Assembly (NCBI GenBank): GCA_965655095.1
Contig: OZ296649.1
Location: forward strand, 41,850,001-41,914,000
Source of the DNA: Haplodiscus bocki
Lineage: Eukaryota
Direction: 5' to 3'
DNA: 64,000 nt
The position numbers and the translations under genes are program-made. The notes beneath the pieces were generated by a model. It was not told the origin of the DNA, ran no database searches, and saw only the letters and a list, made by a program, of their open reading frames with translations. How positions within the stretch are numbered: the stretch's first letter is position 1; every line of letters begins with the position of its first letter. Below, piece after piece: positions 14,654 to 63,130 of the stretch.

Positions 14654-15250
14654 AGTAGTGAGAGAGCGAGCAAACCAGGTGGCGGGGTGGTAGAGGTCGC
14701 TCCACGTTTTAAGATAGGCTGGAGGATCCGACAGCTGACTAGTGGGTAAAATATATGAAATGGGTAGACGTCCCATCTCGGGTTCTAAGTTCAAACGAGG
14801 AGTCAGTCTGTTAAGATAGGGTTAAAACATGTTTTCGGTGGAGGCGAGACGATCAATTTACTTACATAGCCGAGCGGAGGTGAGAGTATTCGGACGTAAT
14901 GAGATAGGGAATATGTAGTTGTATATATAGGAGCAAGACAGCCAGGTGGTTGAACACAGCAATGTAATAAAATAGGTGACAGGAGCACAGAACAGGTAAG
15001 GATCTTGATCCCCCTCTCTGATGTGTCTTCAATGACTGGCGCGGTTAGTGGTCATTTTTGCCACAGTAAGACTTCCGAAAGCAGTTTTCGTTTCTTATTA
15101 GAGTATCAGGCGGTGGGCGGAAATATATCACAGCACCGAAACAATTATTACGCCTGAGGTTATTCATTACACCTGCAGTTAATAAGAACGCTTGCTGTTA
15201 CATGTAACGGCTGGAGAGGGATTAATATATGCTGCTGTCAGTTGTTTTAC
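14654..15250 (+). repeat. Maverick left TIR
   Basis: Reverse complement aligns with 29920-30494 (shared CTCATTACGTCCGAATAC, TTGATCGTCTCGC, ATTAACTGCAGGT); roughly 70-85% identity by eye; inner boundary approximate. Confidence 0.88.
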
Positions 15251-15339
15251 TTCCTGTTGTAACTTAATTCCGTGTAAATGATTGTAATGTGCTTCGAAAA
15301 GTTAAGTTAATTAAATTGTATGAAACCGAACAAACATTT

Positions 15340-18070
15340 TAAGTTAAAAGTTTAATAGAATGATTTTTTAAAAGAAAAGTATGAATTTTGTCTGCTTCTC
15401 CTATTATCGTCGGATAAAAATACGACAAGTACTGTTGTTCTGCTAAAAGGCTACTACAGTCTGATTCATTTTTCGGATTCTGCAATTTGTAGATATTACT
15501 ATATCTGCTTCCTTGGAGAGTTTCCAATATTTCACTATGCGACCGTCTTCTTTGTCATCAAGTTTTCGTTTGTTTAGTCCCTCCTAGATGAGTTGATAAG
15601 TGTTGGAGCGAAAGTCGTAACAAAAGTACCTTTCATCACATAAAGGCAACCTTTCGGTGCAACAAAACTGCTCTTTCCACAGTTCAGGTTCTCTTGTTCC
15701 ATTTTGTTTTTGTTTCGCACAAACTGTACGGGAAAAAGTAACGGCGAGCGTCTGCTTTGAAGTTACAGTCTTTGCTTCGCGACAACTCCCGTTCTTTCCT
15801 TTTTGTTGCTTTTTCTTGGCTGCAACTATAAGTATCCTTCTCAGCAAGTGCTATAAAGAGATAACTTACATACATTTTCATCTCTTATTTGTTTGTACCG
15901 CAAAATTTTCTCAAGTTTTTGTAACAGAGCTCCAACACTCTCAGTTTAGTATACTGCAAAACACAAAAAAACTCCACAAAAATTGGCTTTTCTTGTTCAA
16001 TTTCCGACTTCACCAGTTGCATTTCATAGAGTTGAACGTCGAGATATCTAGTATCTTGTACAGTTTATTTTCGATTGCTGCTGGCATCGTCTCATCATTC
16101 AGGTGATCTGTAACATATGACGACTACGGTCTGTAACTTTATTAACAAAAGAACTGTTCACCTGTAATTTATTTGACTCTGCCACAACTCTAGAGTTTGG
16201 ATTTTTGTCTCATTGTCGTCAAGCATTAACAGCAGAATGCAAAAAAAGCAATGAAGCACTTCACAGGAGCGTACTTAACAAAATCATAAAAATTGGTGCG
16301 CACGAGGCTCAGTCTCAAACTAAACAAAAGTAACGGGGAACGATTGTTTCATTCTTTTGCTCAAAGAAAGATTTTTTTTTCGTAGAAGCGGATTCATGAG
16401 TTCTTCTTTCTTCGCATACTCCTAAAATGAGGGACGAAAATCTTGTCTGCTTACGCTAATATTTTCGAACAGCGTAAAAAAGTTGTCAAATTGTTTTCTC
16501 AGATGCTGTGGGACCTGATTGTGACACTGTAAAAAACCAAACATCCAGCTTGATTTGATTTTTCTTCCAATGTTCTCTTGAAAGAGAACCCTTCATTCAA
16601 TTGTCGCTTTACTAAACTTTCTATCTTTTTTAGTGACCATCACTTACATTTCTACACCTCTGCCGTCTCCTAAATTCTCTGTTTGATGCACTGCGTGTAT
16701 TTTGTCAATTTGCCTCTTTTTATTTCAGTATCTTCTGCGGCAAAAGCTCGTGCTTTTTGGCATGAACAAAAATGAGGAAATCAACCCCGTGCTTCAAACA
16801 TGATGTTGCAATACGCGCAAATTGCTCTGCACTGAAGCAGTTATTCTCTTTCAGAATTTATGTGGTGAAGAAGCCCGCCATTTTACACTCGCACTCAAAT
16901 AGCTGGAAAATGACATGACCATATTTTCGAAGATTCTTGTCTTACTTTGTTTGTGTTTAGATCCTTAGAAATCTTCGTCAAATTAGCATTTAGTGTAAAA
17001 TCCTGTAGACATGGGCTGACACATAGACTTTGGGAAAAATGCTAGCATCATTCTCAACAAGTGATTTGCAATTTCTCTAGGACCTGTGAATAACAATCTC
17101 ATCAACAAAAATTTTACGTGTACACTTTGCTGAGGGTCGACCAATCATGTCTTCTTAGTTTATCATCGGCAAAAGCCTGTCGCTCCATTTGAAGAAGAAA
17201 ATTTTGTGCTATTAGACTTGTGTTTACACTTTTTGACGAAAAGCGGTAAGAATCATCCGAGCTTGAGCAAATCACAACGATTTTTGTGATAAAATGCAAC
17301 CATTTTCTACGAAGCCTCCAAAGTCGGGTCAACGTTTTTGATGTTGTATCACAGCAAAAAGCTTCTTGCAAGTTTTTCTCAGTAAAAGTGATTCACAACT
17401 CCAGTAGCTGGTACTTCAAAGAGTTTCACATTAGTTCAGGCAGAGACCGTGAACAATACGCTAGTGATCAATTCTTTATTTTCTTGACAACTTCAATTTC
17501 ACATTTGAATGTAAAACGTTTCATAGAGGAATTTCTGTGTGATTCAATTTGTTTGGGTGATTGAGCCATTCGGACGGATTTTTTTTTCGTTTCTGATATT
17601 CTGAAAGTTTCTGTGAGAGAATCAAAGCTCGTGCGTCCGCCAGAAAAGATCAAAATGTCGAGCAACTGAAAATTACCAAGCTTGAACTGGATTAAATGAC
17701 CGGCCTTCTCATCAACAGATCCTCCATCTCTCATTGAGTAACACAAACAGCTAGTATGTAAGCGCCTACCAAAAGCATATCATACTTTGCACTGTTCACC
17801 CAAAGAACGGTAGTGTCTTGCGATATTTCATGAATCCATCCCGCAATTGAGGTAGTCGATTTTCCTGCAACTGCGGAAACTGTGTTGAGACTTTGTCAAA
17901 ATCAGCTTCGAGGCCGTCCTCTTCCATATTGGTTTTTTGGCTCAAACTGTGATGAACTTTTTCCAAAATTAGTGCAATGTTACTTAATATTGTTGCTTCG
18001 ACTGCAGGAACTTCAACTTCAATTGAACTTTAAATTTTCAAACATGTTTTCTTTTCTAAACAAAAAGTGA
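15340..18070 (-). pseudogene. Protein-primed family B DNA polymerase (pPolB), frameshifted and with stops; N-terminal part not found
   Basis: Fragments on minus strand in the expected order: exo II-like NSAKYD (~17790), FKLGNFQLLDILIFSGGRTSFDSL, EDMIGRPS...CKSLVENDAS...SMCQPMSTGFYT (motif A region, ~17000-17150), REPELWKEQF...RYFCYD, C-terminal LSYFYP...IHT. Confidence 0.85.
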
Positions 18071-21000
18071 AACAAGCCTTTTACAATTTCAAATCAGTGT
18101 TTTTGGTCAGCGAAAAATATTCAAAGAGAATAAGTTTTCCTGATAAAGCGAGAACGTTTCTGCGAAGATCCATCAAGAGGAACAATCTTCCCTGATAAGG
18201 TAGAAACTTGTCAGATGAAAATTCACAAGTGAAATATTTCCCCTTTCAAAAAATTTTTGTCTGAAAAAAATGGTCAAATAGAGCAATTAGCTTCCAAGTT
18301 GCCCTTGAGTTTTCTCGTATCAATTGTCAATGAAATGCGTAGAAAGAGCAACAATTGAATCTTGCACAATCTCCGTAGTGTAGAGGGTGAAAGCTGCTGA
18401 TAACAGACGAACAGATATATCGAGGTGTGTTCTCGCCATACATCGACGTAAGGAAACTTTTAAACCCAGTAAATCTCAGCTACAAGAGAACTGTTTCTCA
18501 ATTTATTGTAAGAGGAGGAACTTTCAATTGTGAATGGTAAGAACAAAAGCACTGCCAGCTCTGTCATTTGTTTAAATTGAAGACTTTAGAAAATATCCAT
18601 CGTTTTCACCACTGTGCTACCGATAAAAAAACTCAAAAATTATTGACCAGTTGATTTCTGTCAGAATGCAAAATCACAGTATTTTTTTGTTCTCACTTAA
18701 TGAAGAAATACCTGAAGGAGTTTCATATCAAACGGACGGAGACAGTTTCTCCAACCACAGTATTTTTGAAGTTATTTGGTCCCAGCATTAACTGGGACGA
18801 GTTAAGAATGTCTCCAACAAAACATCACGCACAGTCAAAATGCTGCAGTTTTTTGACTCGAAGACAGAGCAACATTTCCTTCAAAAAAAGCGAATTCATC
18901 CACAGAGCGGTTTGGTTGTTCACTCAACAGTTCGTGCCAAGGTCTTGAAGCTTTTGTTTTGATCGAGCTGGCAATATTGACACAATCTACTACCGAAACA
19001 AAAAACTGTGGTTAATTCCACAAAATCGAGAAACAAGCCCTTTGGTTATTGCTCAAGAGATAACACTGAAACATCGAACCAACTAACTTATTAAATGTTT
19101 AGTTTTGATAATGACAAATACTGCAGCTTCTCCATCAAAAAGTCTGATATTCTCAAAAAATGATTCAAGCTAACAGAACAGCTCGGCCTTAATAAATGCA
19201 AACTTTACCACCTATGCAGGAACTGATAATACGTAGCTTACAAGTTTTGAATACTTGAAAACAATTACGACGTGTGGCACAATCGATGAAAATTGCCGCT
19301 ATCGTCGCTCTTTTCTCCTTATTGGGACCGAATTTTGTCCGATTGAGAGGTATTCACGGAAACTTTGCGCTCTCAAAAAACTTTTTCAAGTAGTCCCTAG
19401 AGCGAATGCGGATCTGCACAATACGTTTCTAAGTGTTTTTCGTAAAATTGCTTGGGAAAGTCAAACAAACTCGTTTTTCATGATGTGTGACCAAAGTACT
19501 TAGACTTTTGGAGAGGTGCAAAACTCAGTTCAGTACATTTTTGGACACGTCTGATGTCATCGAGGTTGTTGTGCAAAACAAAGTTTGTCTAATTGCGCAC
19601 ATTGTTTACAGAGCGGTGAAAAGTCTTACAATTGTTTGTAAAGCAAAGCGTGCTGCAGCAATTTCAACAACTTCAACAAGTTCAACAAAAAAACAATTTG
19701 ATGAAAATGGAACTTCTTGTTTCATCAAAATCACAAATCAAGACTAAGAAGTAGAAAAACCGTCCCCTTTCCTCTAAAAGTATCTCCGTGAACCACAAAC
19801 CGCCATACCTGAATCAGCCATAAATGCATGAATCTTGTCAACAGTACATTTACTGACCAAGTCAACTAATTTTTTTTCTCTTTTAATTTCATTCCACAAA
19901 TAGGCACCATGTTTTTCTCCGTCTCCAACAACGACATACAGTTGCTTCCCGATTTTGGTCTACATTCTGTAACGCTAAGTTTTGAAAATTGTGTCCAAAA
20001 GTTGACATCTAGCTCACAAAAAGGTCGTTTGGCTGCTTGCAACATGCTTCAGGGTCAGACATAGGAGTTTTACTACAATCATTTGGCTCGCATCACGATC
20101 ACTCCCTGGCAGTCTAGCAGCACAGAACACAAGAACCGCGTGAGGAGGTTCCTTTTAGAGCTGGAGCGGAGGAAATCCTTACCATTGGTTTTAAGGATTC
20201 TCATCTCGACGACAGAGAGTTTCAGTTGGAGTTTTCCGAGCGTTAAACGGAGACGCTGTTCGATCCCAGATTAGACACCCGTTTTCGTCAGCTGTCGAGA
20301 ATTCTGTGATAAGTCTGCTAGAAATCCCACTGTACTCAACGATGAGGAGGACGAAGAGGACTTCGTCATGCAGATTTCTTTTCTTTGAGAAGCCAACCCG
20401 ATTCCAAACGTTGCTGAGACTTTGCTTTTTCTAGAATTGGAACTCAAATGGTTCTGGGTTAAGCATAGAAAATTGTTTCAAAAATTATTACTTTGTTTGT
20501 AATATACTGAACGACTTCGTTAAAAAGCTATATTTCATCGTCTCTTTATCTCTGAACAAGTCAGAAGAGGTTGAGACAAAGGGAAGTCTATGTTCTCATC
20601 AGTACTTCTTCTAGGTTATTTAAATGTCCAGTACATACAGAGAAGACAAAATGACAGCATAGCAAAATCAATTGTCAAAATCACTGCCAGGATGTGTATG
20701 GGAACTATTGTTTGAATGCTTTTATCTTTTTGACGATAATTTTTTATAATTTAGGTTGTAATTGGTCATCGACTCATGGACAAAAACGATATGAAAGGTA
20801 TATATGGTGGAACTAGTGTGGAAATTGGCACCACAGTTAACTAAAGTTTTTGATTCGAATTATGACACGTTGTAAGAATTTTTGTTCCACAACTTCTTTT
20901 TCTCGAAGAAGACAATTTGCTGCAGAGTTCTGCTTTTACAAGAACACAAAGAAAAGCAAAATTTGACAATTATACGGAATAACTTCAGTCAAGACGTGAC

Positions 21001-29919: not shown

Positions 29920-30494
29920 AACCAACTATTAGCAGTATTTTAAACTATTTCCCGCAGTAACCTGTAACAGCAGGCGTTTTGATTAACTGCAGGTTCAATG
30001 ATTAAACCCAGGCGTATAATTCGTTTCCGTGCTGTAAGATATTTCCACCCGGCACCTGCCATTCAGGAAAAAAACTGTTTTTGAAAGTCTGACTCTACCA
30101 CAAATGACCCCTAACCGCGCGGGTCAATAAATCACATCAGAGAGGAGGATGAAAAGCCTTCTTGGTTCTGTGCTCCAATCACTTTTTACCCTACTTTGTT
30201 CAGCCCCCTGGCTGTTTTGCTCATATATATATACAGCTACATTTTCCCTATCTCATTACGTCCGAATACACTCGCTTACACTCGGCTATGTTAATATATT
30301 GATCGTCTCGCGTCCGCCGAAGACATATTTTAAACCTATCTTAATACATTGACCCCACGTTCCAGCACAGGACCCGAGAAAGGACCTCCACCCACTGTCC
30401 TCCATTTTACCTACTCTGGGAACCTAAAGCCTATCGTAATACATGGACGTACATCCTCCACCCCGACACTTGATCTGCTCACTCTATTACTTCT
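29920..30494 (-). repeat. Maverick right TIR
   Basis: Inverted copy of 14654-15250; terminal GCTCACTCTATTACTTCT aligns without gaps to the reverse complement of AGTAGTGAGAGAGCGAGC. Confidence 0.88.
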
Positions 30495-31249
30495 TGCCTA
30501 TAATACTCCAGTAAGTATTCCTAAAAAAGGAGAAAGGACAGGAGCCATTGTGATCTGGGACATTTTGTCAGTGCATGCGCAATTTCAACGCAAAGACAAG
30601 CGAAGCATGGGAGAACTGGCATAACAATTGAATCCATGATTGTTGCTTTAGCTCTCTTGATTTACCCTAGAAAATCCTTTTGACGATGGCTGAGAGTTCT
30701 CAAACTATAATCTAGCTTTTCATAAAGGTAACAAGGAACGTCAATTTTTCCACCCAGCAGGCTGAAAAAACTTCCAGTCATAACCTGCCGCAAAAAGGGT
30801 TTCCGAATAAAAAAGGAAATCAATCACTAGTCTTTAAAAATGAAAGACTTTGACCAGTTCACTGGTGAAATTCCGCTCTTGTAGATATTCAGTTCTAGTG
30901 TTTTTCATATTCCCAGGTGATTTTTAAGGAAACTGAAACCCCATATTCTAACTAAATTTACGAATACTGAAACTGAAGTATGCACAAGACAGCAGCACAA
31001 CGACAAGGTATCTCTCGGAGGAAAAAGTAACGGAACAGCTTGCTTTATACACTTTTTTTCAACTTTCAAAGCAATGTACTATACCGATAATGAGATGATT
31101 GTGAAACTGTAGATCATAATTTTTCGTCAAAGCAAAAATGTTAGCTTCTGCGGAGTGCTTTAATGTGTACTCTGTGAAGCAATTTGATCAATAGATAGCG
31201 AGGTAATCAGTTTTGAAAAATATTATGTGTGTTCTCTTCTTTGTTAAAA

Positions 31250-31790
31250 TTAAGAAACAAGATTTTCCGTCGAAAATTTTTTGTCTCACAGTGTGGAAAA
31301 AGTTCGTAGGGGAATCCTTTAGTGTCTCATTAATTTTGGGTATCGAAAAATGTTAGAGATAAGAGGGGGCGAATCACGATTTTCCCTCGAAATTGTTTCT
31401 GTCTCTCAGTACCGAAACATTTCGTAGAGGAACCCTTCTGTGCTGTGTTTCAGAAACTTTCCGGCAGCGAAAAAGTTTATGGATAAGGGGGAGGGAGGAA
31501 GTATCAAAATTTTCCGTCTAATATTTTTTGTCTCACAGTGCTGAAAATTTTGCAAAGGAACCCTTTATTGTTTCAGTAATTTCGGGTATCGAAAAATGTT
31601 AGGGATAAATCGTAAAAATATTTGTCACGACAGAGACTCGAACCCCGAACCTACTGCTTGATAACGTTGTTGTCCTAACCCTACTGCTGTCATTTATTTT
31701 TAAATAAAAAGAGTTCGTCTGAAAAAAAAGTAAAACGGCCCTACTGAATGAATAATTTTTCTTGCATATTACATATGCAGCGAAAAATAA
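31250..31790 (-). mobile_element. Partial copy of a Helitron-like composite repeat with a tRNA-like segment and ~120-bp internal repeats
   Basis: Reverse-complement homolog of 42090-42908 (shared GCATATGTAATATGCAAGAAAAATTATTCATTCAGTAGG, GGGGTTCGAGTC and TTTTTCGATACCCGAAATT repeats). Confidence 0.6.
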
Positions 31791-31924
31791 TAATCATAGG
31801 AGTCGATTCACAGAGTTACGGTATACCGTAACTCTGTGAATCGACTCCTATGATTATTATTTTTCGCTGCATATGTAATATGCAAGAAAAATTATTCATT
31901 CAGTAGGGCCGTTTTACTTTTTTT
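31723..31924. repeat. Perfect 202-bp palindrome with no spacer
   Basis: Centre GGTA|TACC at 31823/31824; the 101-bp arms are exact reverse complements. Confidence 0.95.
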
Positions 31925-31983
31925 GTCGAATTAGTTGCTTAATAGTAACATATATGTTACTATTAAGCAACTAAATCGACAAA
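31922..31983. repeat. Second zero-spacer palindrome (62 bp, one mismatch)
   Basis: TTTGTCGAATTAGTTGCTTAATAGTAACATA|TATGTTACTATTAAGCAACTAAATCGACAAA, centre 31952/31953. Confidence 0.93.
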
Positions 31984-32071
31984 TGTATGTTTAGTGAATT
32001 CAAATCTGTTTTGGTGGGTATCGGGTTCGTTTTTACAACACCGTACAATTAGCAGTCATCTCGATTACGTA

Positions 32072-32756
32072 CCAGGGTCGACAGCCGTGGTCAAACATGA
32101 TGATCATGCAATGACATGGTATGATCATGGTGATTCATGGCATGGCCATCATGGAGAATAGCATGATCATGCCATGGTGACCATGGTCATTATTATAACA
32201 TAGTCAGGACTCTAAACATCCAACCAACTTTGTTAAATAGTAAGCAGGTAGTAGTCCCTTTGTTTTTAATATGAAATATGTTGGACGAACACATCAAAAA
32301 CTACCCAAAAGCCATTTAGGAAAATGTATCTCTCTCCCAAAATATTGAAGTCACCAAAAATAACAAGAAGCTGTGATATGTATGTTATATTGAACCTGTT
32401 GCTCGATAAGAACTTTCTGTTTGTTTATTATAGAAGAAAACTCCGATCTCTCTGGAGTAATCCTCGTTTTTAGCTTTGATGACTCGGAAATTTTGAGGCG
32501 TATATTCCTCTAAAGCCAGTCAAGTGTGCCATATAATGGTATATGGCAGCAACTACTTGAAAAAAAATAATGACGAAATCCCCATTTTTTAAAAAAACAT
32601 GGAAAACATGATGATCATACTATGATCATGCCATGAATCATGAAGACCATGCCAAGAAACATGGCCGCCATGCCGTCATCATGGCATGATTATGGCAATG
32701 TTTCGCCATGATCATGGCAAGATCATAGCATGGCAGCCATGTTTTTCCAACCCGGG
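32072..32756. mobile_element. Non-autonomous CCCGGGTTG-TIR element with CATG-rich subterminal repeats
   Basis: TA|CCAGGGTCGA ... TCCAACCCGGG|TA; dense CATGATCATG/CCATGG motifs at both ends. Confidence 0.7.
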
Positions 32757-33356
32757 TAGTATTGTATATGATAATGTGGGAGTTATTCTGAATTTCGAGG
32801 TGCAGTGCGATGTAATATGAAAAAGTAGTAAATGTACCATTCGCTCACGTACCGAATGACATAAGACCACTAAACATAAATTTCGAAGTAATCTCACTAA
32901 CTAAACTTACAATTATCATTAAGTAGTATACATAATTAGTACTAATTGTGCTAATGACAGCCTGAAAGGGATTTGCAATACTATTAGCATTGAAATCAAC
33001 ACCTTCGGCATCTCGACATCACCCAATCCGACCACTCGGTGGCCGTTATGTGTGCCCTTGCTATGCTCGGAGATTCTTACTTGCCCCCATTAGTAACATT
33101 TTTTTATTCGTAAAGACATGCGTTGACTATATTATAACAAAGTTAACGGGTAGTACCTATATAAATTTCAGCCAATCAGAACATTTTGTCTGTACGAGAT
33201 ATAAATTTTATGTTAAATGAGACTCTTTTCAATTTTATGCATAAAATTGTTGATTTTCCATTCTTGTTAATCAACAGAGCCTGTATCGAACAGCTGTTAA
33301 ACTCAACTTGGAACCCTTGCACTGCGATTCATAATGTATGATAATGTGACGACTAG

Positions 33357-35524
33357 TGTCGCACGTGGTGGGGGTAGAGGTATTGCGAACCTATTCTTTA
33401 CTCAGTTGTGCTGGCGTTTGACTCAGTCAGCACTATTATGCTATAGCGACGGTTATTATTTATAAGTCTCATTAGGGTGCCTTGCTTAACGTGCGAACAA
33501 AGGGATTGCGTGAATTCAAGCAAGGACTTGTGAGCTATAAAGAAGAATACAAAAGAATTTTAAATTATAAACAGTGAAAATTCAATATTTTGAACAGTAG
33601 AGGAATCATAACTGCTCGTATGGGAAAGGGGAATTACTCATATGGTCTTTTACGTTAGAAGATGGCATTGATCGTGTTGATGTTGGCTGTTGTTGATTAC
33701 TGCCGATTGCTGATGGTTGCTACTGGTTGCTGGGTGATTGATGGCTACGGCTGGGATACTGCTTCTAGGCGGGAAAGTCTTTGAATACTTTCGAAGAGAC
33801 GATGAGGAATTTCGGCTAAGACAAGTTTTAAAATTGTCTTAGAATATTTCGAGGAGGTGATGAAGAAATTTGACTAAGAGAAGTTTTAAAATTGTCTTAG
33901 AATAATTCAAAGCAGCGATGAGGTAATTTGGCAGAGACATGTTTTAAAATTGTCTTAGAATAATTCGAAGCAGCGATGAGGAAATTTGGCAAAGACAAGT
34001 TATAAAATTGTCTTAGAATAATTCGAAGCAGCGATGGGGAAATTTGGCAAAGATAAGTTTTAAAATTGTCTTAGAAGAATTCGAAGCAGCGATGAGGAAA
34101 TTTGGCAAAGACAAGTTTTAAAATTGTCTTAGCATATTTTCGTTGAGAGGCAACTGGAATCTGGTAAAGACATTACTGAAAATTGTCTTAGAATATTTTC
34201 AAGGAGAGGCAATTGGAATTTGGTAAAGACATTACTGAAAAATGTCTTAGAATATTTTAGAGGAGAGGCAATTGGAATTTGGTAAAGACATTACATAAAA
34301 ATGTCTTAGAATATTTTCGATGAGAGGCGATTGGAATTTGGTAAAGACATTACATAAAAATGTCTTAGAATATTTTCGACGAGAGGCGATTGGAATTTGG
34401 TAAAGACATTATTTAAAAATGTCTTAGAATATTTTCGTTGAGAGGTAATTGGAATTTAGCAAAACAAGATTTAGACTTGTCTTAGAATATTTTCAGTGCA
34501 AAGCAATTGGAATTTGGCAAAGACAAGATTTAGACTTGTCTTAGAATATTTTCAGTGCGAAGCAATTGGAATTTGGCAAAGACAAGATTTAGACTTGTCT
34601 TAGAATATTTTCAGTGCGAAGCAATTGGAATTTGGCAAAGACAAGATTTAGACTTGTCCTAGAAAATTTTCAGAGCGAGAATTAAGCTCTAGAAAATATG
34701 ATGAGAGGAAAGTGGGAGAGAGTTTCGCCTCGGGGAATTAGGCCAGTTGACGGTAGGAAAAGGAATGAATAAAGTGAGAGTACGGGGTATTTATACCCTG
34801 TTATATAGCAATCGAGTAATTGACCAATAGGAAAGCGCCGCAAATATCAATGTCAACGAAGGTTATCTAGTCGGTAGCAATAGTTGAATTTTGGAAAAGG
34901 GACGGTTTCTGCATATTTAACCCATAACTCGGAATTTAGAATAAATTCTAAAGACCATGGAATTAGACGAGGTGAGAATGATCTATGAGTAATGTCAATT
35001 CTCTTTGCCTAAGAACCTCGTGGGGGGTCGTGCATATTTAAGATCCACTCAAGCTTCAGAACCTAAGTTCATCCACGGAACCCGCACACGCCAATGCCGA
35101 AGCTAGCGTCAGTGGACACCGTTTATACTCCGATGGCAAGAGTATAGAATTTGTAGAGGGAAAGAGGAATTTTTTCTAAGTTAGAATGAAAATGGGACTT
35201 GGAATATTTTTGTCCGAAGAGAAGCAGGAAGAGAATTTAGAATAATTTTAACCGAGCAAGAATGGAAAGAAAATAACGTTAAAAGGAAAGGGAGTAAAGT
35301 AAAAGGGAAGAGGAGAGTAATGTAAAGTAAAAGGGAAAGAAGTAAAGCTGCCGTCCGGTAAGCGAGTAAGTCAGTAATATTCAAGCCGCTTTCCTCTACC
35401 AGCTACAAAATGTAGCTAACGCGCGCGTGTCTTTATTTTGTGCGTTGGACCACATTTCAACGCGTTTAGAAATTTTCCTTTTCTTTCCTTTTACATTTGT
35501 TTAAGCGTTAGCTATAACGCGACA
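33357..35524 (-). repeat. 3' LTR (2168 bp)
   Basis: Direct repeat of 38235-40286 with TG...CA termini. Confidence 0.95.
33777..34680. repeat. Tandem array of ~15 x 58/59-bp stem-loop units in the 3' LTR
   Basis: GTCTTAGAATA recurs every 58-59 bp (33836, 33894, 33952 ... 34656); each unit contains AAGACANN-N7-NNTGTCTT. Confidence 0.93.
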
Positions 35525-36956
35525 ACTCACCGGGGTTAAAGGGATAGAAAAATGATTGGGGGGTGCAAGGGAAATAGGTTTAAAAATATAAAGAAGATGT
35601 CGGCAATGCGAGAGCGGTACTTGGTGGTCTCTGCCATCCAGTCGTGTAAATCTAGCATAAGTAAATGAAATCGAATTTTATCGTACCTGGCCAAAACCCA
35701 ACAATCTTCTAGCTGCAATCAAGATGTTAACTGTAAGCTTCGTGTAATCTAACTTTCATCTGCATTCAGTTTAGCGGGAGAAAAGAAAAATAGCTTAATT
35801 CGCCACCGGATTCCCAAGTGGAAAAGGTCTCTCTATTCTGCCAGAGGAATAGCTATGGAGGAATACCGTAATATCAAACCGGCGCTCTGTGGGCACTAAG
35901 ACAGAGTAGGAGCTAAGTTTTTATAGTAGTAGCTCCACTACTTTTAAAACGACGCCGAGATTTTTATAAAGGACGCTGGGTCGAACCCAGTTTCGTCAAA
36001 AAGTGCCAAATCAAATTTGCCTCTTCCGTAACAAGTTTATTAAAGTCAGCCTATTTTCAGGCTGTCTGTCAATGTGACTTGAGATTAATGTAGTCTGGAA
36101 AGCCTCGTCAGGCTTGCAAAAGACGTGTGGGCCCATTAATTATAATTCGGATAGAGGAAGAATAAGTAGTTTGTTCGAGGGTTCTATATTTGATGTGAAG
36201 ATTGTTCCCACTTAGTTAGAGTGAAAGCGGGTGGACTGTTGATCAGTGACACCTCGTGAAATACCCCAAGGTCTTTGTGCGTAATCAAGAGAGTCGTGCA
36301 GGCTTTGGTTTTCCCGTTCTTCCAATTTTCGGGGATATCTAGGGTCACAAAGAGGCTGGCGAAATCTTCTTTTCCAGCTATTTTGGGTATAAGTATCGCA
36401 GCGAGTAGATTCTCAACAATCCGGATTCTGACTTAAAGGCAGTTCCCGTCAGTAATCCAAAAGATGTTAAAATATTGTGCTCTCCTTCAGATGTCATATA
36501 TGTTGTCGAAAGCGTGTAGGGTGTTGATCTGTGACACCTCGTGGCTTGCAACGAGTAGATTCTCAACAACCCCCAAATCTAACTTTGGAGAATGCTTCTG
36601 GCAGGTTTTCAAAAGCTGGATAGAAAAGTTCTAAAGATTGTCCATCATGAAAATGTGCTCCCAATGAAGTATCTTTGGTTTCCACTTGCCGCGAAGAGTT
36701 AGTTCTGGGTTGGTTTTTGGTGTGGCCAGGGCATTATGGTCGATTATCTTGCGGTTCAAGAATTCCAGGTAATTAATTGCGTGGATAATCTTGGCTGACA
36801 AGATTTTTGTATGCATGCCTAATGCTGGTTATTTGGATGAGAAGAATAGATATAGGATTAGACGTGGGCAATAGAGAAGGTGCAATCAAATAAAGTGAGA
36901 ATATAAAAAGTTTAAAAAGGATATAAAATGGAAATAAAAAAGAGGCTTTGGAGGCT

Positions 36957-38128
36957 TCAGTAGCCTAAAGGAAGTGAGTCCGATGATTCACCGTCAGACT
37001 CGCCGATTGATGTAACTTCTGCCATATTGAAGCTCATGCCATTGTCCCTTGGAAGGAGTCTTCGTTCGGGAGGAGTAAACTGTTGATCTTCATGTTGCCA
37101 TTTTGCTTCCTCATTAGAGAGCCGTTCGATCGATGGGCTGCTTCTATCATCCACTTCAAGAAAATTGTTCATGGCGTCGTTGTTTGGTGGTTTAGGATTG
37201 AATTGCTCAATGGAAGAGTCCTTTATGGGACTGATTTCCCTTTTGGACCACATATCGTTGCGTATTTTTCGTACTTCTTCATCTCGCATTTTTTTGCGAC
37301 ACCAATTTAATTTATGTCCATTTTTATGGCAGTAATTACAGAATCGGGTAGTTTTTTGTCTTCCCTGTTGATTGGGATGAAAAGTCCGTGAAGTTACTGC
37401 TACGGCGCTGACGTGATATTCTTTCAACTCTGATCGAAGGTTTTTTTTATCTCCTGTCCAAGTGTTGCCAATTCTGCTTTGGTTTGTGCTTCATGAGATA
37501 GAAAAGTCGAGGATGCCTCTAGTATCAAATCTTTTTGAATTATCTGGGCACAGAAATCGTTCCACGTGGCGTTTGGACGCTCCATCAGATACTCTTGAGC
37601 TTTCCGTTGGAGATATCTAGGTCTAAGTCCTCGCAGACTGTAGTCCATGTACCTCTGTCTCCTTTGTCTGCCTTGTGCTGCTCGTTCTGCATTTTGTTGA
37701 GCGGCCTCAATACCGTTCATATCATCGGGCCAGCCCTTGTCAACTGTCCGTTTGATACGTTGTAAGAAGTTCCGAATTTCTTCTCCATCTCCTCTAATAC
37801 AAGATTCCACTTCCATTCGGTATCGAAATTTATTTCGTCCATCTGAAAATCTAGTGATGAAGGTTGTTCGAACATCCTCCCAGGTTGTTGCGTTGGTTAT
37901 ACTGCTCTCATACCACTCAGCGGCTGGTCCTCGGAGTAAAGATGAAAACAGCGCTTTTTTTCTGAAAGTGTAGTTTGCAAGTTCACCCGCATCTCCAGGT
38001 GCGTCTCCAAGAGCAAAGTTGATTTTTCGTTCGATTAGTTGAATGAAAGATTCGGCATCTTGATCGAGATCTGTGCCAGAAAATTTGTCCACGGCCAAGT
38101 CGGGATAGGCAAGATGAGCAGCAGCCAT
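36957..38128 (-). CDS. gag: Gag (capsid-like domain plus CCHC zinc knuckle), split by a frameshift in an A8 run at ~37441-37448
   Basis: The 234-aa ORF has KFSG and LRGPAAEWY...TWEDVRTTFITRF (retrotransposon Gag signature); the -1 frame continues NLRSELKEYH...CNYCHKNGHKLNWC (CX2CX4HX4C) to the stop at 36957; about 390 aa if joined. Confidence 0.85.
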
Positions 38129-38213
38129 TGTAATAATTATCAGAACAACATAAACCGTACAAATATAGCTCCAGCAAAAACGGATTTTAGTTAAAAGGGT
38201 TGCTCACAGATGG

Positions 38214-38231
38214 GCCTCACTGGTCGCACCA
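38214..38231 (-). other. Primer-binding site (tRNA 3'-end complement)
   Basis: Minus strand reads LTR-CA aac TGGTGCGACCAGTGAGGC; its complement GCCTCAC-TGGTCGC-A-CCA has tRNA T-stem, acceptor and CCA geometry. It resembles elongator Met or Ile-TAT 3' ends; identity unresolved. Confidence 0.8.
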
Positions 38232-38654
38232 GTTTGTCGCACGTGGTGGGGGTAGAGGTATTGCGAACCTATTCTTTACTCAGTTGTGCTGGCGTTTGAC
38301 TCAGTCAGCACTATTATGCTATAGCGACGGTTATTATTTATAAGTCTCATTAGGGTGCCTTGCTTAACGTGCGAACAAAGGGATTGCGTGAATTCAAGCA
38401 AGGACTTGTGAGCTATAAAGAAGAATACAAAAGAATTTTAAATTATAAACAGTGAAAATTCAATATTTTGAACAGTAGAGGAATCATAACTGCTCGTATG
38501 GGAAAGGGGAATTACTCATATGGTCTTTTACGTTAGAAGATGGCATTGATCGTGTTGATGTTGGCTGTTGTTGATTACTGCCGATTGCTGATGGTTGCTA
38601 CTGGTTGCTGGGTGATTGATGGCTACGGCTGGGATACTGCTTCTAGGCGGGAAA

Positions 38655-39440
38655 GTCTTTGAATACTTTCGAAGAGACGATGAGGAATTTCGGCTAAGAC
38701 AAGTTTTAAAATTGTCTTAGAATATTTCGAGGAGGTGATGAAGAAATTTGACTAAGAGAAGTTTTAAAATTGTCTTAGAATAATTCAAAGCAGCGATGAG
38801 GTAATTTGGCAGAGACATGTTTTAAAATTGTCTTAGAATAATTCGAAGCAGCGATGAGGAAATTTGGCAAAGACAAGTTATAAAATTGTCTTAGAATAAT
38901 TCGAAGCAGCGATGGGGAAATTTGGCAAAGATAAGTTTTAAAATTGTCTTAGAAGAATTCGAAGCAGCGATGAGGAAATTTGGCAAAGACAAGTTTTAAA
39001 ATTGTCTTAGCATATTTTCGTTGAGAGGCAACTGGAATCTGGTAAAGACATTACTGAAAATTGTCTTAGAATATTTTCAAGGAGAGGCAATTGGAATTTG
39101 GTAAAGACATTACTGAAAAATGTCTTAGAATATTTTAGAGGAGAGGCAATTGGAATTTGGTAAAGACATTACATAAAAATGTCTTAGAATATTTTCGATG
39201 AGAGGCGATTGGAATTTGGTAAAGACATTATTTAAAAATGTCTTAGAATATTTTCGTTGAGAGGTAATTGGAATTTAGCAAAACAAGATTTAGACTTGTC
39301 TTAGAATATTTTCAGTGCGAAGCAATTGGAATTTGGCAAAGACAAGATTTAGACTTGTCTTAGAATATTTTCAGTGCGAAGCAATTGGAATTTGGCAAAG
39401 ACAAGATTTAGACTTGTCCTAGAAAATTTTCAGAGCGAGA
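38655..39440. repeat. Tandem array of ~13 x 58/59-bp stem-loop units in the 5' LTR
   Basis: Same units as 33777-34680 with two fewer copies. Confidence 0.93.
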
Positions 39441-39524
39441 ATTAAGCTCTAGAAAATATGATGAGAGGAAAGTGGGAGAGAGTTTCGCCTCCGGGAATTA
39501 GGCCAGTTGACGGTAGGAAAGGGA

Positions 39525-39590
39525 ATGAATAAAGTGAGAGAGTACGGGGTATTTATACCCTGTTATATAGCAATCGAGTAAATGACCAAT
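39525..39590 (-). promoter_or_regulatory. Putative LTR promoter (CCAAT box, TATA boxes, pyrimidine-rich initiator)
   Basis: Minus strand: ATTGG (39590-39586), TATATAA (39569-39563), TATAAATA (39557-39550), then CTCACTTTATTCATTC about 20-35 nt downstream. Confidence 0.55.
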
Positions 39591-40949
39591 AGGAAAGCGC
39601 CGCAAATATCAATGTCAACGAAGGTTATCTAGTCGGTAGCAATAGTTGAATTTTGGAAAAGGGACGGTTTCTGCATATTTAACCCATAACTCGGAATTTA
39701 GAATAAATTCTAAAGACCATGGAATTAGACGAGGTGAGAATGATCTATGAGTAATGTCAATTCTCTTTGCCTAAGAACCTCGTGGGGGGTCGTGCATATT
39801 TAAGATCCACTCAAGCTTCAGAACCTAAGTTCATCCACGGAACCCGCACACGCCAATGCCGAAGCTAGCGTCAGTGGACACCGTTTATACTCCGATGGCA
39901 AGAGTATAGAATTTGTAGAGGGAAAGAGGAATTTTTTCTAAGTTAGAATGAAAATGGGACTTGGAATATTTTTGTCCGAAGAGAAGCAGGAAGAGAATTT
40001 AGAATAATTTTAACCGAGCAAGAATGGAAAGAAAATAACGTTAAAAGGAAAGGGAGTAAAGTAAAAGGGAAGAGGAGAGTAATGTAAAGTAAAAGGGAAA
40101 GAAGTAAAGCTGCCGTCCGGTAAGCGAGTAAGTCAGTAATATTCAAGCCGCTTTCCTCTACCAGCTACAAAATGTAGCTAACGCGCGCGTGTCTTTATTT
40201 TGTGCGTTGGACCACATTTCAACGCGTTTAGAAATTTTCCTTTTCTTTCCTTTTACATTTGTTTAAGCGTTAGCTATAACGCGACACTAGGGATAATACT
40301 TTTAGGAGAAAATTTGCGCTTTTTACCGGGTAAGAACAAAAATAGCAGGCCCTGTTAATCAACAGAATTTCTAGCTAACTTGAGAGTAGTCATCGTTGCA
40401 ATCGGACCAATAGTTTTTGAGCTTCATTTCATTTAAAAAAACATCCATTTTTCCTGAAATACAAGTCAAAAGTCAACATAAAGTATGAAAAGAGAAGTCC
40501 CTATAATGCAACTACCGAGTAGCTGAATTAGCTCCGGATGGCTTTATTTCGATTAAAATTTGATGAGAAAATCATTGCTCAAAAATCTTTGGGAATAAAA
40601 TTTCGACATCCTTTTCATGAGCCCCATCGTTTATTCATCGAATTTTTTCCCCAAACTAGTTTTCTTCACTTCGCACGGGCTTGCGCTTCTAGTGCGTTTC
40701 AGAAATTGCACTTTCTGTATATACAGACAAAAAGTTTTGCACACAATAATGAAAAAGCCACACTGGCTTAAAGAGAGTGGGGAATTAATATCGACAGAAA
40801 TTTTGGAAAGTTGTAAAACTTTGAGAAATTGCTCCAAAAACTGGAATTCGCCAAAAATTATGAACTCATTTTCAAGTTGTTTTTTTAACCACTTTGATGA
40901 AGTTACAATAATTAATTTTGAGATTTGACAAAAATATCACTTTCAAACA

Positions 40950-41880
40950 GGTGCAACATAAAAACCAACGCACTGAAAAGATGCATTATTCGAAGGAAAC
41001 TCAGAGTGTAGATCCTTTTCTTTTTATTTGAATGTTCAAAACGTTTGAAATGCTCGCCGAAGTACGTTCACTTGTTACTGATGCACGTTTGAACGCTATT
41101 GCGAGGTTTTTTTTACCGCAGATGGGAGAAGTGATAACGTGGGAAGAGTGATAATGTTGGAGGAGTGATAACGTGGGAGGAGGAGAGTTAGAACCAAAAA
41201 AAGTGATGACGGCGCAAATTTCGTAGATACGAACAATGAACTATAGCATTTCGCCTCAATGCAGTATAGCACCGAGTTCCAGGAAAACTTCACAAGAAGA
41301 GAAAAAAATGGAAATTTGAACCCGCAGCAGTTCCTCATTTTGGTGGTTCTTGGGAGCGCACAATGAGAGCTTATATGCATGCCAATATTCAACTTTTTTG
41401 CTGAGGGATTAGCTATAGTTTTGTGACTTACATGACAAATATGGAACTCCCGTCTCTTCGTGCCTATTTGAGGTGATCCAATGGATTTGGAAGTCCTACC
41501 GACGAACAATTTTTTGCTGAGCTGGGCGAGTATTGAGGAGCCTTACTTGTCGGAACCGGATAAGCACTACACTTATTTAAATTTTCTCAGAGAGGCTCAA
41601 GCACATATGGACAATTTTGGGCACGATGACTATCTGGGCTACCTACCATTACACAATATTCACCAAAATTGGTTCAAAAACGGCCACAACTCAAGAAGCA
41701 ATCTAGTGTGGATAATCGAGTAAAAACATGAATTTTACCGCCCTGGTAGGTTCCAGGAACGTCATTTGGGCCATGATGGTATTGTTAGCTCCTGTGACGT
41801 CATGACTCAATCGGGAACGCTCTCAAAGCCTTCTGTAGAATTGTGGACTGTGTCAGACGAAAACTTGTGTTGTTACCCCT
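40950..41880 (+). pseudogene. BEL/Pao LTR-retrotransposon integrase and C-terminal (DUF5641-type) relic
   Basis: LNAIARF, SDDGANFV, WKFEPAAVPHFGGSWER, PMDLEVLPTNNFLL, QFWAR*L, GRFQERHLGHDGIVSSCDVMTQSGTLSKPSVEL; followed by PPT-like AGAGGGCCGGCAA-TG at ~41891-41905. Confidence 0.8.
41123..41195. repeat. Short ~16-bp tandem mini-insertion (GAGTGATAACGTGGGA) interrupting the BEL integrase
   Basis: Three visible units placed between the RFxxRR and SDxG motifs of the integrase relic. Confidence 0.55.
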
Positions 41881-42089
41881 CAGGATAAACAGAGGGCCGG
41901 CAATGAAAGGCTTCACGTATTTAGAGGAAACGCCGTTAACCAGTCTACATCGAAACTCTATAAAACTATACTAAAAACTGATTCAAACTTTCGGACCTCT
42001 GTGACTCTCATATTTTGGAAAAAAGTAACGGTCTAGCAAAAAATCTTTTTCTGTGGTAAAATTGGCCTTCACGCCAAAATCATTGACTT

Positions 42090-42908
42090 TATTTGTATTT
42101 TTCGCCGCATATGTAATATGCAAGAAAAATTATTCATTCAGTAGGGTCGTTTTTCTTTTTTTTTCAGAGCAGAATTGCCAACTTTTTAAATTCAAAAATA
42201 AATGACAGCGGTAGGCTTAGGACAGCAAGGTTCTCAAGCTGTAGGTTTGGGGTTCGAGTCACTGCCCTGCCAAAATTTTTTTACGATTTATCCCTTACAT
42301 TTTTCGATACCCGAAATTAGTGATACAGTCAGGGGTTACCCTACGAAATTTTTCGGCGCTACGAGACAAAAAAATTCGACGGAAAATCGTCAGCCCCCCC
42401 CCCTCTTATCTCTAACTTTTTTCGATACCCGAAATTAGTGACACACTGAAGGGTTCCCTTACGAAATTTTTCGGCACTGTGAGACAACAAATTTTCTATA
42501 GAAAATCGTGATATTCCCCTCATAGGCATAAAATTTTTCGATACCCGAAATTAATGAAACACTGAAGGGTTCCCCTACGAAAATTTTCGGTACTGTGAGA
42601 CAAAAAGTTTCCGACGGAAAATATTGATACCCCCCTCTCTTATCCATAACATTTTTCGATAACGGAAATTTTCTGAAACACAGAAGGGTTCCTCGACGAA
42701 ATTTTACGACACTGTGAGACGAAAATTTTGCAAGGGAAAATCGTGATACCTTTTTGCATAAATTACAGAAATCAGTGGTCGAATTGATTTGTCAAACTCT
42801 TCGAAAACTAATATCAAAACAGTAGTTTTGTTTTTAATCGTTTGCAAAAATTGATCAAAATATTGGTAGTTGGGCGAAAAATATGCCGGTGCTAGCCGGC
42901 CGTCTTGT
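42090..42908 (+). mobile_element. Helitron-like non-autonomous composite repeat (tRNA-like segment, ~120-bp internal repeats, 3' hairpin plus CTTG|T)
   Basis: 3' end GCCGGTGCTAGCCGGC-CGT-CTTG|T; internal repeats TTTTCGATACCCGAAATTA...GGGTTCCCCTACGAAA; no TIR or TSD seen. Confidence 0.55.
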
Positions 42909-43081
42909 CTTTATATTCATTCAATTTTTATCTCTGTATTTGACTGTCGCGCGGTTTCTGTGAATATTTGTTTGCATGCACAAGCGACATTAGACCATCT
43001 AAATTGGATGAACGATTTTCATTGGATAATGAAAATGATAATCATATCTTGTTGTAATCTTTTGGTAGAGACCTAATAACT

Positions 43082-62759: not shown

Positions 62760-63130
62760 GGACTTGTAGAATGCAATTTTGACAATCCTGACGAAAAATT
62801 TCCCCTGAAATCCGAAAATTTTTCGTTCCAATCTAAAAAAAAAACAATTTTTCATTGAAAGATTTTTTTCCAAAATCTTTCTCTGTACATGCAGAATGCA
62901 GTTTTGACAAGCCTGCCAAAAACTTTCGCTGAAATCCAAAAATTTTTCGTTCCAGTTTAAAAAAATCAATTTTTCATTGAGAATTTTTTCTCCAAAATCT
63001 TTCTCTGTACATGCAGTATGCAGTTTTGACAAGCCTGCCGAAAACTTTTCGTTCAAAGTCCGAAAATTTATGCTTCTTCTCCAAAAAATATATATAATTT
63101 TTCCCTTAAAATTGTTAGCCCCAAAATGTT
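62760..63130. repeat. About 3 tandem copies of a ~123-bp repeat
   Basis: ATGCAGTTTTGACAAGCCTGCC-type motif recurs at ~62770, ~62896 and ~63018. Confidence 0.75.

What the first reader, a model, noticed from the sequence alone, without database searches (positions are those of the whole stretch)
33357..40286. Recently mobile gag-only LTR element with oversized LTRs (animal TR-GAG-like parasite)
Seen: LTRs make up about 60% of a 6.9-kb element and are nearly identical; TSD and PBS are intact; the interior encodes only Gag with its own acidic C-terminal tail and stop, and shows no trace of PR/RT/RH/IN. Knowledge: gag-only non-autonomous elements (TR-GAG) are described mainly from plants. Inference: a satellite retroelement that supplies its own capsid and borrows Pol from a helper Gypsy element, rather than a one-off deletion derivative.
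Basis: partly seen in the sequence, partly recalled or inferred. Interest (0 to 1): 0.75.

Follow-up and report, generated by a model that had tools for sequence, protein, structure and literature searches.

The report
Gag-only satellite of a giant retrovirus-like element
This is a young copy of a many-copy, capsid-gene-only retrotransposon, most likely in a stony coral, that lost its enzymes and envelope by one ancient deletion and almost certainly spreads by borrowing them from a 20-kb retrovirus-like relative in the same genome.

Summary
Window 33357-40286 is an LTR element on the minus strand. Its LTRs are 2052 and 2168 bp (61% of 6930 bp) and differ by 3 substitutions, a 2-bp indel and two 59-bp repeat units. 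It has a 4-bp TSD (CTAG), an 18-nt PBS, and an interior holding gag and no pol or env. In this copy gag is split into two ORFs by a frame break at a homopolymer run.

It is not a one-off. At least six further insertions with the same gag-only structure have their own 4-bp TSDs. One 90% cluster holds 277 distinct Gag sequences. All variants, including two from a Cyphastrea coral metagenome, share the same deletion breakpoints.

Gag dN/dS is 0.11-0.24. An intact helper candidate exists in the ENA assembly that holds the sister copies: 20,084 bp, LTRs 99.8% identical, with gag, a 1827-aa pol, a paramyxovirus-F-type env and a TRAF/MATH ORF. It has the identical PBS, matching LTR termini, a 4-bp TSD and 78% Gag identity.

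The satellite reading is supported. Trans-mobilisation itself is inferred, not shown. This is an animal counterpart of plant TR-GAG elements.

The parts
33353..33356 (.). Left target-site duplication, CTAG
   Evidence: Identical 4 nt on both flanks.
33357..35524 (-). 3' LTR in element sense, 2168 bp
   Evidence: Self-BLAST and global alignment with the other LTR.
33777..34678 (-). 58/59-bp tandem array inside the 3' LTR, about 15 units, two more than in the 5' LTR
   Evidence: TRF and repeat families. The unit is homologous to the array in the helper LTR.
34895..35212 (-). LTR block conserved with helper LTRs (3' LTR copy)
   Evidence: 89-91% identical to helper LTRs, while the rest of the LTR does not align.
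35525..35574 (-). 3' end of the interior: region homologous to the helper's pre-LTR region, ending in GGTGAGT (35525-35531), a probable short PPT
   Evidence: Conserved in all satellites and helpers directly before the 3' LTR.
35778..36019 (-). Remnant B of the helper's pol-env spacer; in the helper it ends 36 nt before the env start
   Evidence: 78-81% identical to the helpers.
36239..36465 (-). Remnant A of the helper's pol-env spacer; a partial duplicate lies at 36486-36615
   Evidence: 71-74% identical to the helpers. Internal repeats seen.
36957..37427 (-). gag part 2: linker, CCHC zinc knuckle (37299-37340) and acidic disordered tail with its own stop
   Evidence: ORF list and translation. 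The tail has no match in the helper. The tail is conserved as far as the Cyphastrea metagenome copies.
37441..37448 (-). Homopolymer run where the gag reading frame changes in this copy
   Evidence: Three-frame translation. The alignment to intact copies shows a length difference at this run only.
37424..38128 (-). gag part 1: capsid-like domain (PF03732)
   Evidence: Pfam E 4.5e-08, above the gathering score. 85% identical to the helper Gag over 228 aa. The model of a sister Gag matches PNMA2/Arc/HIV capsid folds.
38214..38231 (-). Primer-binding site TGGTGCGACCAGTGAGGC, 3 nt after the 5' LTR
   Evidence: Identical in the helpers L008, L009, L019 and L005 and in the satellites.
38235..40286 (-). 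5' LTR in element sense, 2052 bp
39657..39974 (-). LTR block conserved with helper LTRs (5' LTR copy); holds a TATAAA
   Evidence: A promoter role is inferred only.
40287..40290 (.). Right target-site duplication, CTAG

Best explanation
Window 33357-40286 (minus strand) is a very recent insertion of a non-autonomous, gag-retaining Ty3/gypsy-type LTR retrotransposon. It belongs to a satellite lineage that arose once from a 20-kb env-carrying, retrovirus-like element by loss of pol and env. Later steps removed most of the leader and a TRAF/MATH accessory ORF.

Shown:
- The family keeps the parts needed in cis: LTR termini, a conserved LTR block with a TATA box, the PBS, two pre-env spacer segments, and the short purine-rich motif before the 3' LTR.
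- It also keeps a Gag with a capsid-like fold, a CCHC knuckle and a novel disordered acidic tail.
- Gag is under purifying selection.
- Copies sit at many sites with 4-bp TSDs.
- An intact, equally young helper candidate with the same PBS, termini and TSD length exists in the ENA assembly that holds the sister copies.

Inferred:
- The satellite RNA is transcribed from its 5' LTR and its Gag is translated.
- That Gag (78% identical to the helper's over the capsid-knuckle core) packages the satellite RNA and co-assembles with helper Gag and Pol.

This particular copy has a frame-broken gag. At best it could move using Gag from sister copies.
For: - Structure, TSD and PBS.
- No pol or env anywhere in the window.
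- Sister copies with the same structure and their own TSDs, all in ENA assembly ERZ26859043: L001, L002, L011, L012, L013.
- Abundance: 1212 gag hits, and 277 distinct sequences within 90% of the satellite Gag.
- Shared breakpoints in all variants, at helper-element nt 4077, about 12430-12680 and 13092-13319. This includes L015 and L017 from the Cyphastrea sp. metagenome Ga0126343.
- One clade holds 38 of 40 short-tail Gags.
- Core dN/dS is 0.11-0.24 with confidence limits below 0.4; tail dN/dS is 0.3-0.7.
- Helpers: L019 is 20,084 bp with LTRs 99.8% identical and TSD ATTG. It carries gag 467 aa, pol 1827 aa, env 729 aa (PF24664) and a MATH ORF of 459 aa. Its PBS is identical. Further helper copies are L008 and L009/L010.
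- Gag is 78% identical to the helper Gag over 299 aa without gaps.
- Capsid-like fold.
Against: - No expression, particle or mobilisation data exist, so trans-complementation is inference.
- The window copy's own gag is frame-broken. This could also be an assembly error at a homopolymer.
- The tRNA matching the PBS was not identified.
- There is no canonical polypurine tract.
- Fold matches have weak E-values (best 7e-3), though all are capsid proteins.
- Only about ten loci were inspected at DNA level. Copy numbers otherwise rest on protein clusters.
- Gag synonymous divergence (0.19) exceeds non-coding divergence (0.05) between copies. That could reflect constraint on non-coding parts or recombination, and recombination with helper gag would weaken the dN/dS argument.
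- The host species of the window and of the ENA assembly is not established. The coral assignment rests on one JGI sample named in a preprint.
Confidence: 0.8

Rival explanations
1. A one-off dead derivative: a full-length element inserted here and later lost pol by a local deletion.
For: By descent the interior is a deletion derivative of a gag-pol-env element. This copy's gag is frame-broken.
Against: The same deleted structure sits at six or more other sites with different TSDs. Breakpoints are identical in all copies, including those from another metagenome. The LTR pair is 99.85% identical, yet the interior differs from the helper by about 22% in gag, so the deletion long predates this insertion.
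Confidence: 0.02
2. Gag-only copies are generated again and again from the full-length element, for example by template switching at a hotspot, and do not themselves propagate. The selection signal on gag then comes from the autonomous lineage.
For: Shared breakpoints could in principle be a recombination hotspot. Gag dS is higher than non-coding divergence between copies, which hints at mosaic histories.
Against: About 785 nt of filler between the breakpoints, including the novel 90-aa tail, is absent from the helpers. It is shared by all variants at 74-89% identity. Short-tail Gags form a clade apart from helper Gags. The satellite subfamilies have their own diverged LTRs.
Confidence: 0.05
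3. The retained Gag is kept mainly as an interfering protein that poisons or throttles helper particles, as Ty1 p22 does in copy-number control, rather than as the satellite's own coat.
For: Gag is conserved. The capsid core is very close to the helper's, which would allow co-assembly. The C-terminal part of the helper Gag is replaced by an unrelated disordered tail.
Against: Selection on a gene carried by a mobile, multi-copy element acts through that element's own spread. The CCHC RNA-binding knuckle is retained. Interference and self-packaging are not mutually exclusive.
Confidence: 0.1
4. A host-domesticated gag gene (Arc/PNMA-like) that happens to lie between repeats.
For: Capsid fold hits include Arc and PNMA2. 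Purifying selection is seen.
Against: The locus has hundreds of copies, is flanked by LTRs with a TSD and a PBS, is frame-broken here, and has no conserved single locus.
Confidence: 0.01

Closest known systems
TR-GAG elements of plants (terminal-repeat retrotransposons with a GAG domain; Coffea, Arabidopsis, Triticeae)
   Same: Non-autonomous LTR retrotransposons that retain a GAG ORF and lack the enzymes, regarded as semi-autonomous (definition quoted in PMC13570524). They are multi-copy and depend on an autonomous partner.
   Different: The host here is an animal, most likely a scleractinian coral. The parent is an env-carrying 20-kb Ty3/gypsy element. The LTRs exceed 2 kb and make up 61% of the element. 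At 6.9 kb the element probably exceeds the size range proposed for TR-GAG; I did not check that range. It has no phylogenetic link to the plant elements.
Env-carrying Ty3/gypsy elements of metazoans ('ancient errantiviruses'; Chary and Hayashi, eLife 2026, PMC13524379)
   Same: The helper candidates (L019, L008, L009/L010) have gag, pol and a paramyxovirus-F-like env (PF24664), LTRs and a tRNA PBS. The paper reports such elements in cnidarians.
   Different: The window element itself has no pol and no env. The paper's text never uses the term 'non-autonomous' (0 occurrences).
Burro giant gypsy-like elements of planarians (Arkhipova and Yushenova 2019, PMC6431247)
   Same: Giant Ty3/gypsy elements carrying a MATH/TRAF-C motif and an env related to mononegavirus fusion proteins, like the helper's fourth ORF and env.
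   Different: Burro encodes these within one huge polyprotein, and it is found in flatworms. Relatedness to the helper here was not tested.
ETn/MusD and IAP I-delta-1 of mouse; BARE2/BARE1 of barley (from my own knowledge)
   Same: Deleted LTR-element lineages that outnumber or rival their autonomous partners and are mobilised in trans while sharing LTR, PBS and packaging regions.
   Different: ETn has no coding capacity. BARE2 is defective in gag rather than retaining only gag. Neither was compared by sequence here.
CM-gag of Culex pipiens (Bensaadi-Merchermek et al. 1997; seen only as a reference in PMC3286476)
   Same: An animal repeated element reported to contain only a gag gene.
   Different: The paper was not read. 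Its structure and relation to LTR elements were not checked.

Membership tests
LTR retrotransposon (structural definition) | Two direct long terminal repeats with TG...CA termini | tested here: met
   LTRs of 2168 and 2052 bp, termini TGTCGC...GCGACA, 99.85% identical outside the array length difference.
LTR retrotransposon (structural definition) | Target-site duplication of fixed length | tested here: met
   CTAG on both sides. A 4-bp TSD is also seen at six other satellite copies and two helper copies.
LTR retrotransposon (structural definition) | tRNA primer-binding site next to the 5' LTR | tested here: inconclusive
   An 18-nt TGG-initiated site lies 3 nt after the LTR and is identical in the helpers. 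The matching tRNA was not found.
LTR retrotransposon (structural definition) | Polypurine tract before the 3' LTR | tested here: inconclusive
   Only a short conserved GGTGAGT (GGGGTGAGT in the helpers). The surrounding 60 nt are pyrimidine-rich.
TR-GAG-type non-autonomous LTR retrotransposon | Retains a GAG ORF | tested here: met
   Met at family level: uninterrupted 389-399-aa Gag with PF03732 and a CCHC knuckle in L001, L003, L011, L012 and L013. In the window copy the ORF is split in two.
TR-GAG-type non-autonomous LTR retrotransposon | [quoted passage not shown] | tested here: met
   Pfam on all post-gag pieces found nothing. tblastn with the helper pol against the window found nothing.
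TR-GAG-type non-autonomous LTR retrotransposon | Propagates as a family (independent insertions) | tested here: met
   Distinct TSDs and shared breakpoints. 277 distinct sequences lie in one 90% cluster.
TR-GAG-type non-autonomous LTR retrotransposon | Mobilised by an autonomous partner | not testable with these tools
   A matching intact partner candidate exists, but mobilisation needs an experiment or population data.
TR-GAG-type non-autonomous LTR retrotransposon | Size range originally proposed for TR-GAG | not tested
   The range was not looked up. PMC13570524 notes that gag-retaining families in beet also exceed it.
Ty3/gypsy (Metaviridae) lineage | Pol domain order PR-RT-RH-IN with Ty3-type RNase H and integrase | tested here: met
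   Met in the helper candidates only. On the 1827-aa pol of L019 the look-up lists RVT_1, RT_RNaseH and RT_RNaseH_2 as full hits and Integrase_H2C2 and rve without a mark. On copy L010 Pfam matches Asp_protease, RVT_1, RT_RNaseH, Integrase_H2C2 and rve. The window element has no pol. It is assigned by 78% Gag identity and shared LTR and PBS.
Env-carrying Ty3/gypsy ('errantivirus-like') | Env ORF downstream of pol | tested here: not met
   No env in the window. Only the pre-env spacer remnants remain. The helper has a 729-aa PF24664 env.
LARD (large retrotransposon derivative) | Large non-coding interior | tested here: not met
   The interior encodes a conserved Gag under purifying selection.

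The most novel reading that the evidence does not exclude
The gag-only lineage is a long-lived, specialised satellite of giant env-bearing retrovirus-like elements in corals. It has a single origin that predates the split of at least two coral hosts. It keeps its own capsid gene under selection and has evolved a new C-terminal tail and its own LTR. It may act as a defective-interfering competitor that shapes the load of its helper, an animal endogenous-retrovirus analogue of a satellite virus.
Probability: 0.3. Interest if true: 0.7.

Novelty: new member of a known kind. Interest (0 to 1): 0.5.

Why it matters
Gag-retaining non-autonomous LTR elements are treated in the literature searched here as a plant phenomenon. 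This is a well-resolved animal case with the whole series preserved:
- an intact 20-kb gag-pol-env-MATH element;
- a 9.6-kb gag+MATH intermediate;
- 6.2-7.3-kb gag-only forms.

The series has one origin, measurable selection on Gag, and helper and satellite insertions of similar, very recent age.

This gives a concrete system for asking why a parasite of a retroelement keeps its own capsid gene, and which non-coding segments are needed in cis. The LTR block and the pre-env spacer stay about 80-90% identical while gag synonymous sites are saturated.

It also warns annotators of coral genomes that hundreds of gag ORFs are not degraded full-length elements.

Tried and rejected
- **Programmed -1 frameshift at the A-run.** The site resembles a slippery heptamer. 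Rejected because sister copies read straight through in one frame and the run length varies between copies.
- **Wrong-strand reading.** The tract next to the left LTR is purine-rich on the + strand, which first suggested a misoriented interior. Rejected because the PBS, gag and the conserved GGTGAGT|LTR junction all agree with minus-strand sense and match the helpers.
- **Central PPT.** The helper has an internal GAGGTGAGT, but it is not retained in the satellites.
- **Origin of the 90-aa tail.** tblastn and sensitive blastn against two helpers found nothing.
- **Host identification from the window.** Seven long ORFs gave no Pfam family. There were no tRNAs and no Rfam hits.
- **tRNA for the PBS.** No tRNA genes were found in nine loci. 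The supplementary PBS table of PMC13524379 is not held.
- **PDB sequence search.** It gave only a weak Arc hit over the knuckle.
- **Representative-library search.** It showed no gag-pol fusion proteins among the best 150 hits, all of which were 495 aa or shorter. The helper therefore had to be reached through neighbouring ORFs.
Full report
**1. The observation**

Self-comparison of window 31000-43000 finds two long direct repeats, 33357-35524 and 38235-40286.
- A global alignment shows 3 substitutions, one 2-bp indel and two 59-bp gaps. The gaps are unit-number differences in a 58/59-bp tandem array.
- The LTRs make up 4220 of 6930 bp (60.9%).
- The termini are TGTCGC...GCGACA, and CTAG flanks both ends.
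- All coding signal is on the minus strand, so the right-hand repeat is the 5' LTR.
- Three nucleotides after the 5' LTR lies TGGTGCGACCAGTGAGGC, a TGG-initiated PBS.
- The window has no N runs and nothing that looks human.

The interior (35525-38234, 2710 bp) holds two adjacent ORFs in different frames.
- ORF 38128-37424 is 234 aa and matches Retrotrans_gag PF03732 at 33.6 bits against a cut-off of 24.1.
- ORF 37427-36957 is 156 aa, with a CX2CX4HX4C knuckle and an acidic end.
- The frame changes at the homopolymer run 37441-37448.
- Natural sister copies carry one uninterrupted 389-399-aa ORF across this site, and the run is the only length difference between the window gag and an intact copy.
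- So gag is broken in this copy by mutation or assembly error. It is not a programmed shift.

The remaining 1.4 kb has no ORF above 82 codons and no Pfam family. tblastn with an intact helper's Pol, Env and MATH proteins finds nothing anywhere in the 64 kb.

**2. It is a family**

A word-based protein search with the first ORF gave 1212 hits, many of 389-399 aa, all from ENA. The 90% cluster of the 399-aa representative has 277 distinct members.

Fetching the DNA around several of them, all from assembly ERZ26859043, showed the following elements.

| Locus | Coordinates | Structure | TSD |
|---|---|---|---|
| L001 | 7875-19306 | Tandem LTR-interior-LTR-interior-LTR, 92-93% identical to the window element over its whole length | CTAC |
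| L002 | 5958-12731 | Same gag-only unit | AAAT |
| L012 | 4754-11930 | Same gag-only unit | GGTA |
| L011 | 5132-11344 | Older subfamily | CTCC/TTCC |
| L013 | 4749-12094 | Same gag-only interior between helper-like LTRs that are 99.95% identical | GCAG |
| L003 | 5016-14582 | Intermediate: the same gag and filler, plus the long leader and an intact 422-aa TRAF/MATH ORF | not determined (3' LTR truncated) |

**3. The parent and helper**

The exhaustive representative search found no gag-pol fusion among the best 150 hits; all were 495 aa or shorter. Gag is therefore always called as a separate ORF.
- A 495-aa relative, 50% identical, is followed by a pol ORF with RVT_1 and RT_RNaseH, on contigs from two ENA assemblies and a Logan assembly of run ERR1726721.
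- One of these contigs carries an exact 24-nt match to the window's LTR end plus PBS.
- Searching with that Gag found 467-480-aa Gags, 70-79% identical to the satellite Gag over residues 11-309, listed only from ENA like the satellite hits. The three whose contigs were fetched lie in ERZ26859043.

Their loci are full-length elements.
- ctg75341 2475-22739: 20.3 kb, LTRs of 2627 and 2392 bp, TSD TGTG.
- L008: a second copy.
- L019 5329-25412: 20,084 bp, LTRs of 2478 bp at 99.8% identity, TSD ATTG. Every ORF is open: gag 467 aa, pol 1827 aa, env 729 aa (PF24664, viral fusion glycoprotein) and a 459-aa TRAF/MATH ORF. The pol product's look-up lists RVT_1, RT_RNaseH, Integrase_H2C2 and rve.
- Copy L010 also shows an aspartyl-protease match upstream of RT.

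All of these have LTR ends ...GCGACA followed by AAC and the identical 18-nt PBS, and GGGGTGAGT directly before a 3' LTR that starts TATCGCGTTA.

The window element shares these parts with them:
- the termini, the PBS and the pre-LTR region;
- a 318-bp LTR block at 89-91% identity that contains a TATAAA;
- gag at 78% nucleotide identity and 78% amino-acid identity over 299 residues without a gap;
- two segments of the pol-env spacer, the second ending 36 nt before the env start.

**4. One origin**

Every gag-only variant was mapped onto the intact helper. All lose homology at helper-element nt 4077 and regain it at about 12430-12680 and 13092-13319.
- The roughly 785 nt between the breakpoints includes the 90-aa tail. 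It has no counterpart in the helpers but is shared by all variants.
- A scan of JGI metagenomes for the LTR-end-plus-PBS string found five contigs from samples Ga0126342 and Ga0126343.
- A preprint names Ga0126343 as a Cyphastrea sp. coral metagenome.
- Two of those contigs (L015, L017) have the gag-only layout with the same breakpoints at 66-74% identity. One (L018) has the helper-type long leader.
- Their Gags lack 45 and 22 residues of the capsid N-lobe but end in the same tail motif.
- In a tree of the Gag core, 38 of 40 short-tail proteins form one pure clade (support 0.84) apart from 70 long-tail helper Gags.

**5. Selection**

These are Nei-Gojobori estimates on natural copies, using the frame of an intact copy and skipping gapped codons.

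| Comparison | dN/dS | Notes |
|---|---|---|
| Satellite copies and subfamilies, whole gag or core | 0.11-0.24 | Upper confidence limits at or below 0.38 |
| Window versus L002 (youngest pair) | 0.69 | |
| Satellite versus helper | 0.08-0.15 | dS near saturation |
| Tail only | 0.3-0.7 | Several intervals exclude 1 |

Non-coding parts are also conserved. Between the window and L001, gag dS is 0.19 but LTR, leader and post-gag divergence is only 0.04-0.06. Between satellite and helper the spacer and LTR block stay at 79-91% identity while gag dS is about 1. I read this as constraint on cis-acting sequence. Recombination is the alternative and was not excluded.

**6. Gag fold**

An AlphaFold2 model of a sister Gag, built with a 36-sequence alignment, is confident for residues 30-250 and disordered from residue 307 onward. 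Its best PDB matches are all retroelement capsids: PNMA2, dArc1, Arc (target TM 0.74), HIV-1 CA and copia. The E-values are weak, 7e-3 at best.

**7. Mechanism**

Shown:
- a non-coding-for-enzymes element with all the cis features of its helper candidate;
- many independent insertions;
- a conserved Gag;
- an intact, equally young helper candidate in the assembly that holds the sister copies.

Inferred:
- transcription from the 5' LTR;
- translation of satellite Gag;
- co-assembly with helper Gag and Pol;
- tRNA-primed reverse transcription at the shared PBS;
- integration by the helper integrase, giving the shared 4-bp TSD.

The window copy, with a broken gag, would depend on Gag from sister copies as well.

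**8. Comparison with what is known**

[quoted passage not shown] Every TR-GAG paper found in the library concerns plants.
- Env-carrying Ty3/gypsy elements with F-type env are described across metazoans, including cnidarians (PMC13524379). That paper's text never uses the term 'non-autonomous'.
- Giant planarian Burro elements also combine MATH/TRAF and mononegavirus-like env motifs (PMC6431247).
- An older report of a gag-only repeat in Culex (CM-gag) was seen only as a citation.

I file the finding as a new member of a known kind: a gag-retaining non-autonomous LTR retrotransposon, here in an animal and derived from an env-bearing giant element.

**9. Limits**

- The host species is inferred, not known.
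- Only about ten loci were inspected as DNA.
- There are no expression or polymorphism data.
- The primer tRNA is unidentified.
- One bench step was referred.

Noticed in passing
L019:5329-25412 (ENA ERZ26859043 ctg81342): An intact 20,084-bp env-carrying Ty3/gypsy element with LTRs 99.8% identical and a fourth ORF of 459 aa encoding a TRAF-like MATH domain downstream of env. The same ORF is intact (422 aa) in the 9.6-kb gag+MATH intermediate at L003:11161-12429.
   Followed up: partly
L001:7875-19306: A tandem arrangement, LTR-interior-LTR-interior-LTR, of the gag-only element between one pair of TSDs (CTAC). The two gag copies are identical apart from one indel.
   Followed up: partly
window 33777-34678 and 38655-39438; L009:2988-3473: The 59-bp LTR tandem unit has a palindromic core (CTAAGACAAT...ATTGTCTTAG). 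It is homologous between helper (8 units) and satellite (13-15 units) but sits on the other side of the conserved LTR block. The unit number differs even between the two LTRs of the window copy.
   Followed up: partly
window gag versus L001 gag and non-coding parts: Synonymous divergence in gag (0.19) is three to four times the divergence of LTR, leader and post-gag DNA (0.04-0.06) between the same two copies. The cause is either constraint on non-coding sequence or recombination.
   Followed up: partly
L015 and L017 (JGI Ga0126343, Cyphastrea sp. metagenome): Gag-only relatives whose 330-aa Gag lacks 45 and 22 residues of the capsid N-lobe yet keeps an open frame and the same C-terminal motif. 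Core dN/dS between the two is 0.68, which looks relaxed.
   Followed up: partly
proteins P0427 and P0438: Some pol-like relatives of the helper carry a Macro domain (PF01661) in their precomputed Pfam list.
   Followed up: no
window 31258-31789 and 42096-42745; 42282-42750; 31853-31927 and 42091-42165: Inverted repeats of about 530-650 bp (77-80% identical) bracket the element at a distance of 1.6-1.8 kb. There is a 116-119-bp tandem array on the right side and a 75-nt direct repeat (92%). This may be another repeat family that the element landed near or in.
   Followed up: no
window 14653-15247 and 29920-30495; 62759-63179: A 600-bp inverted repeat pair (75%) lies 15 kb apart, and a short tandem duplication of about 125 bp lies near the window end.
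   Followed up: no
window 3028-3582, 8409-8580, 10829-11012: These stretches match host DNA flanking the helper in L019 (68-78% identity). They are other dispersed repeats shared between the window's genome and the ENA assembly.
   Followed up: no
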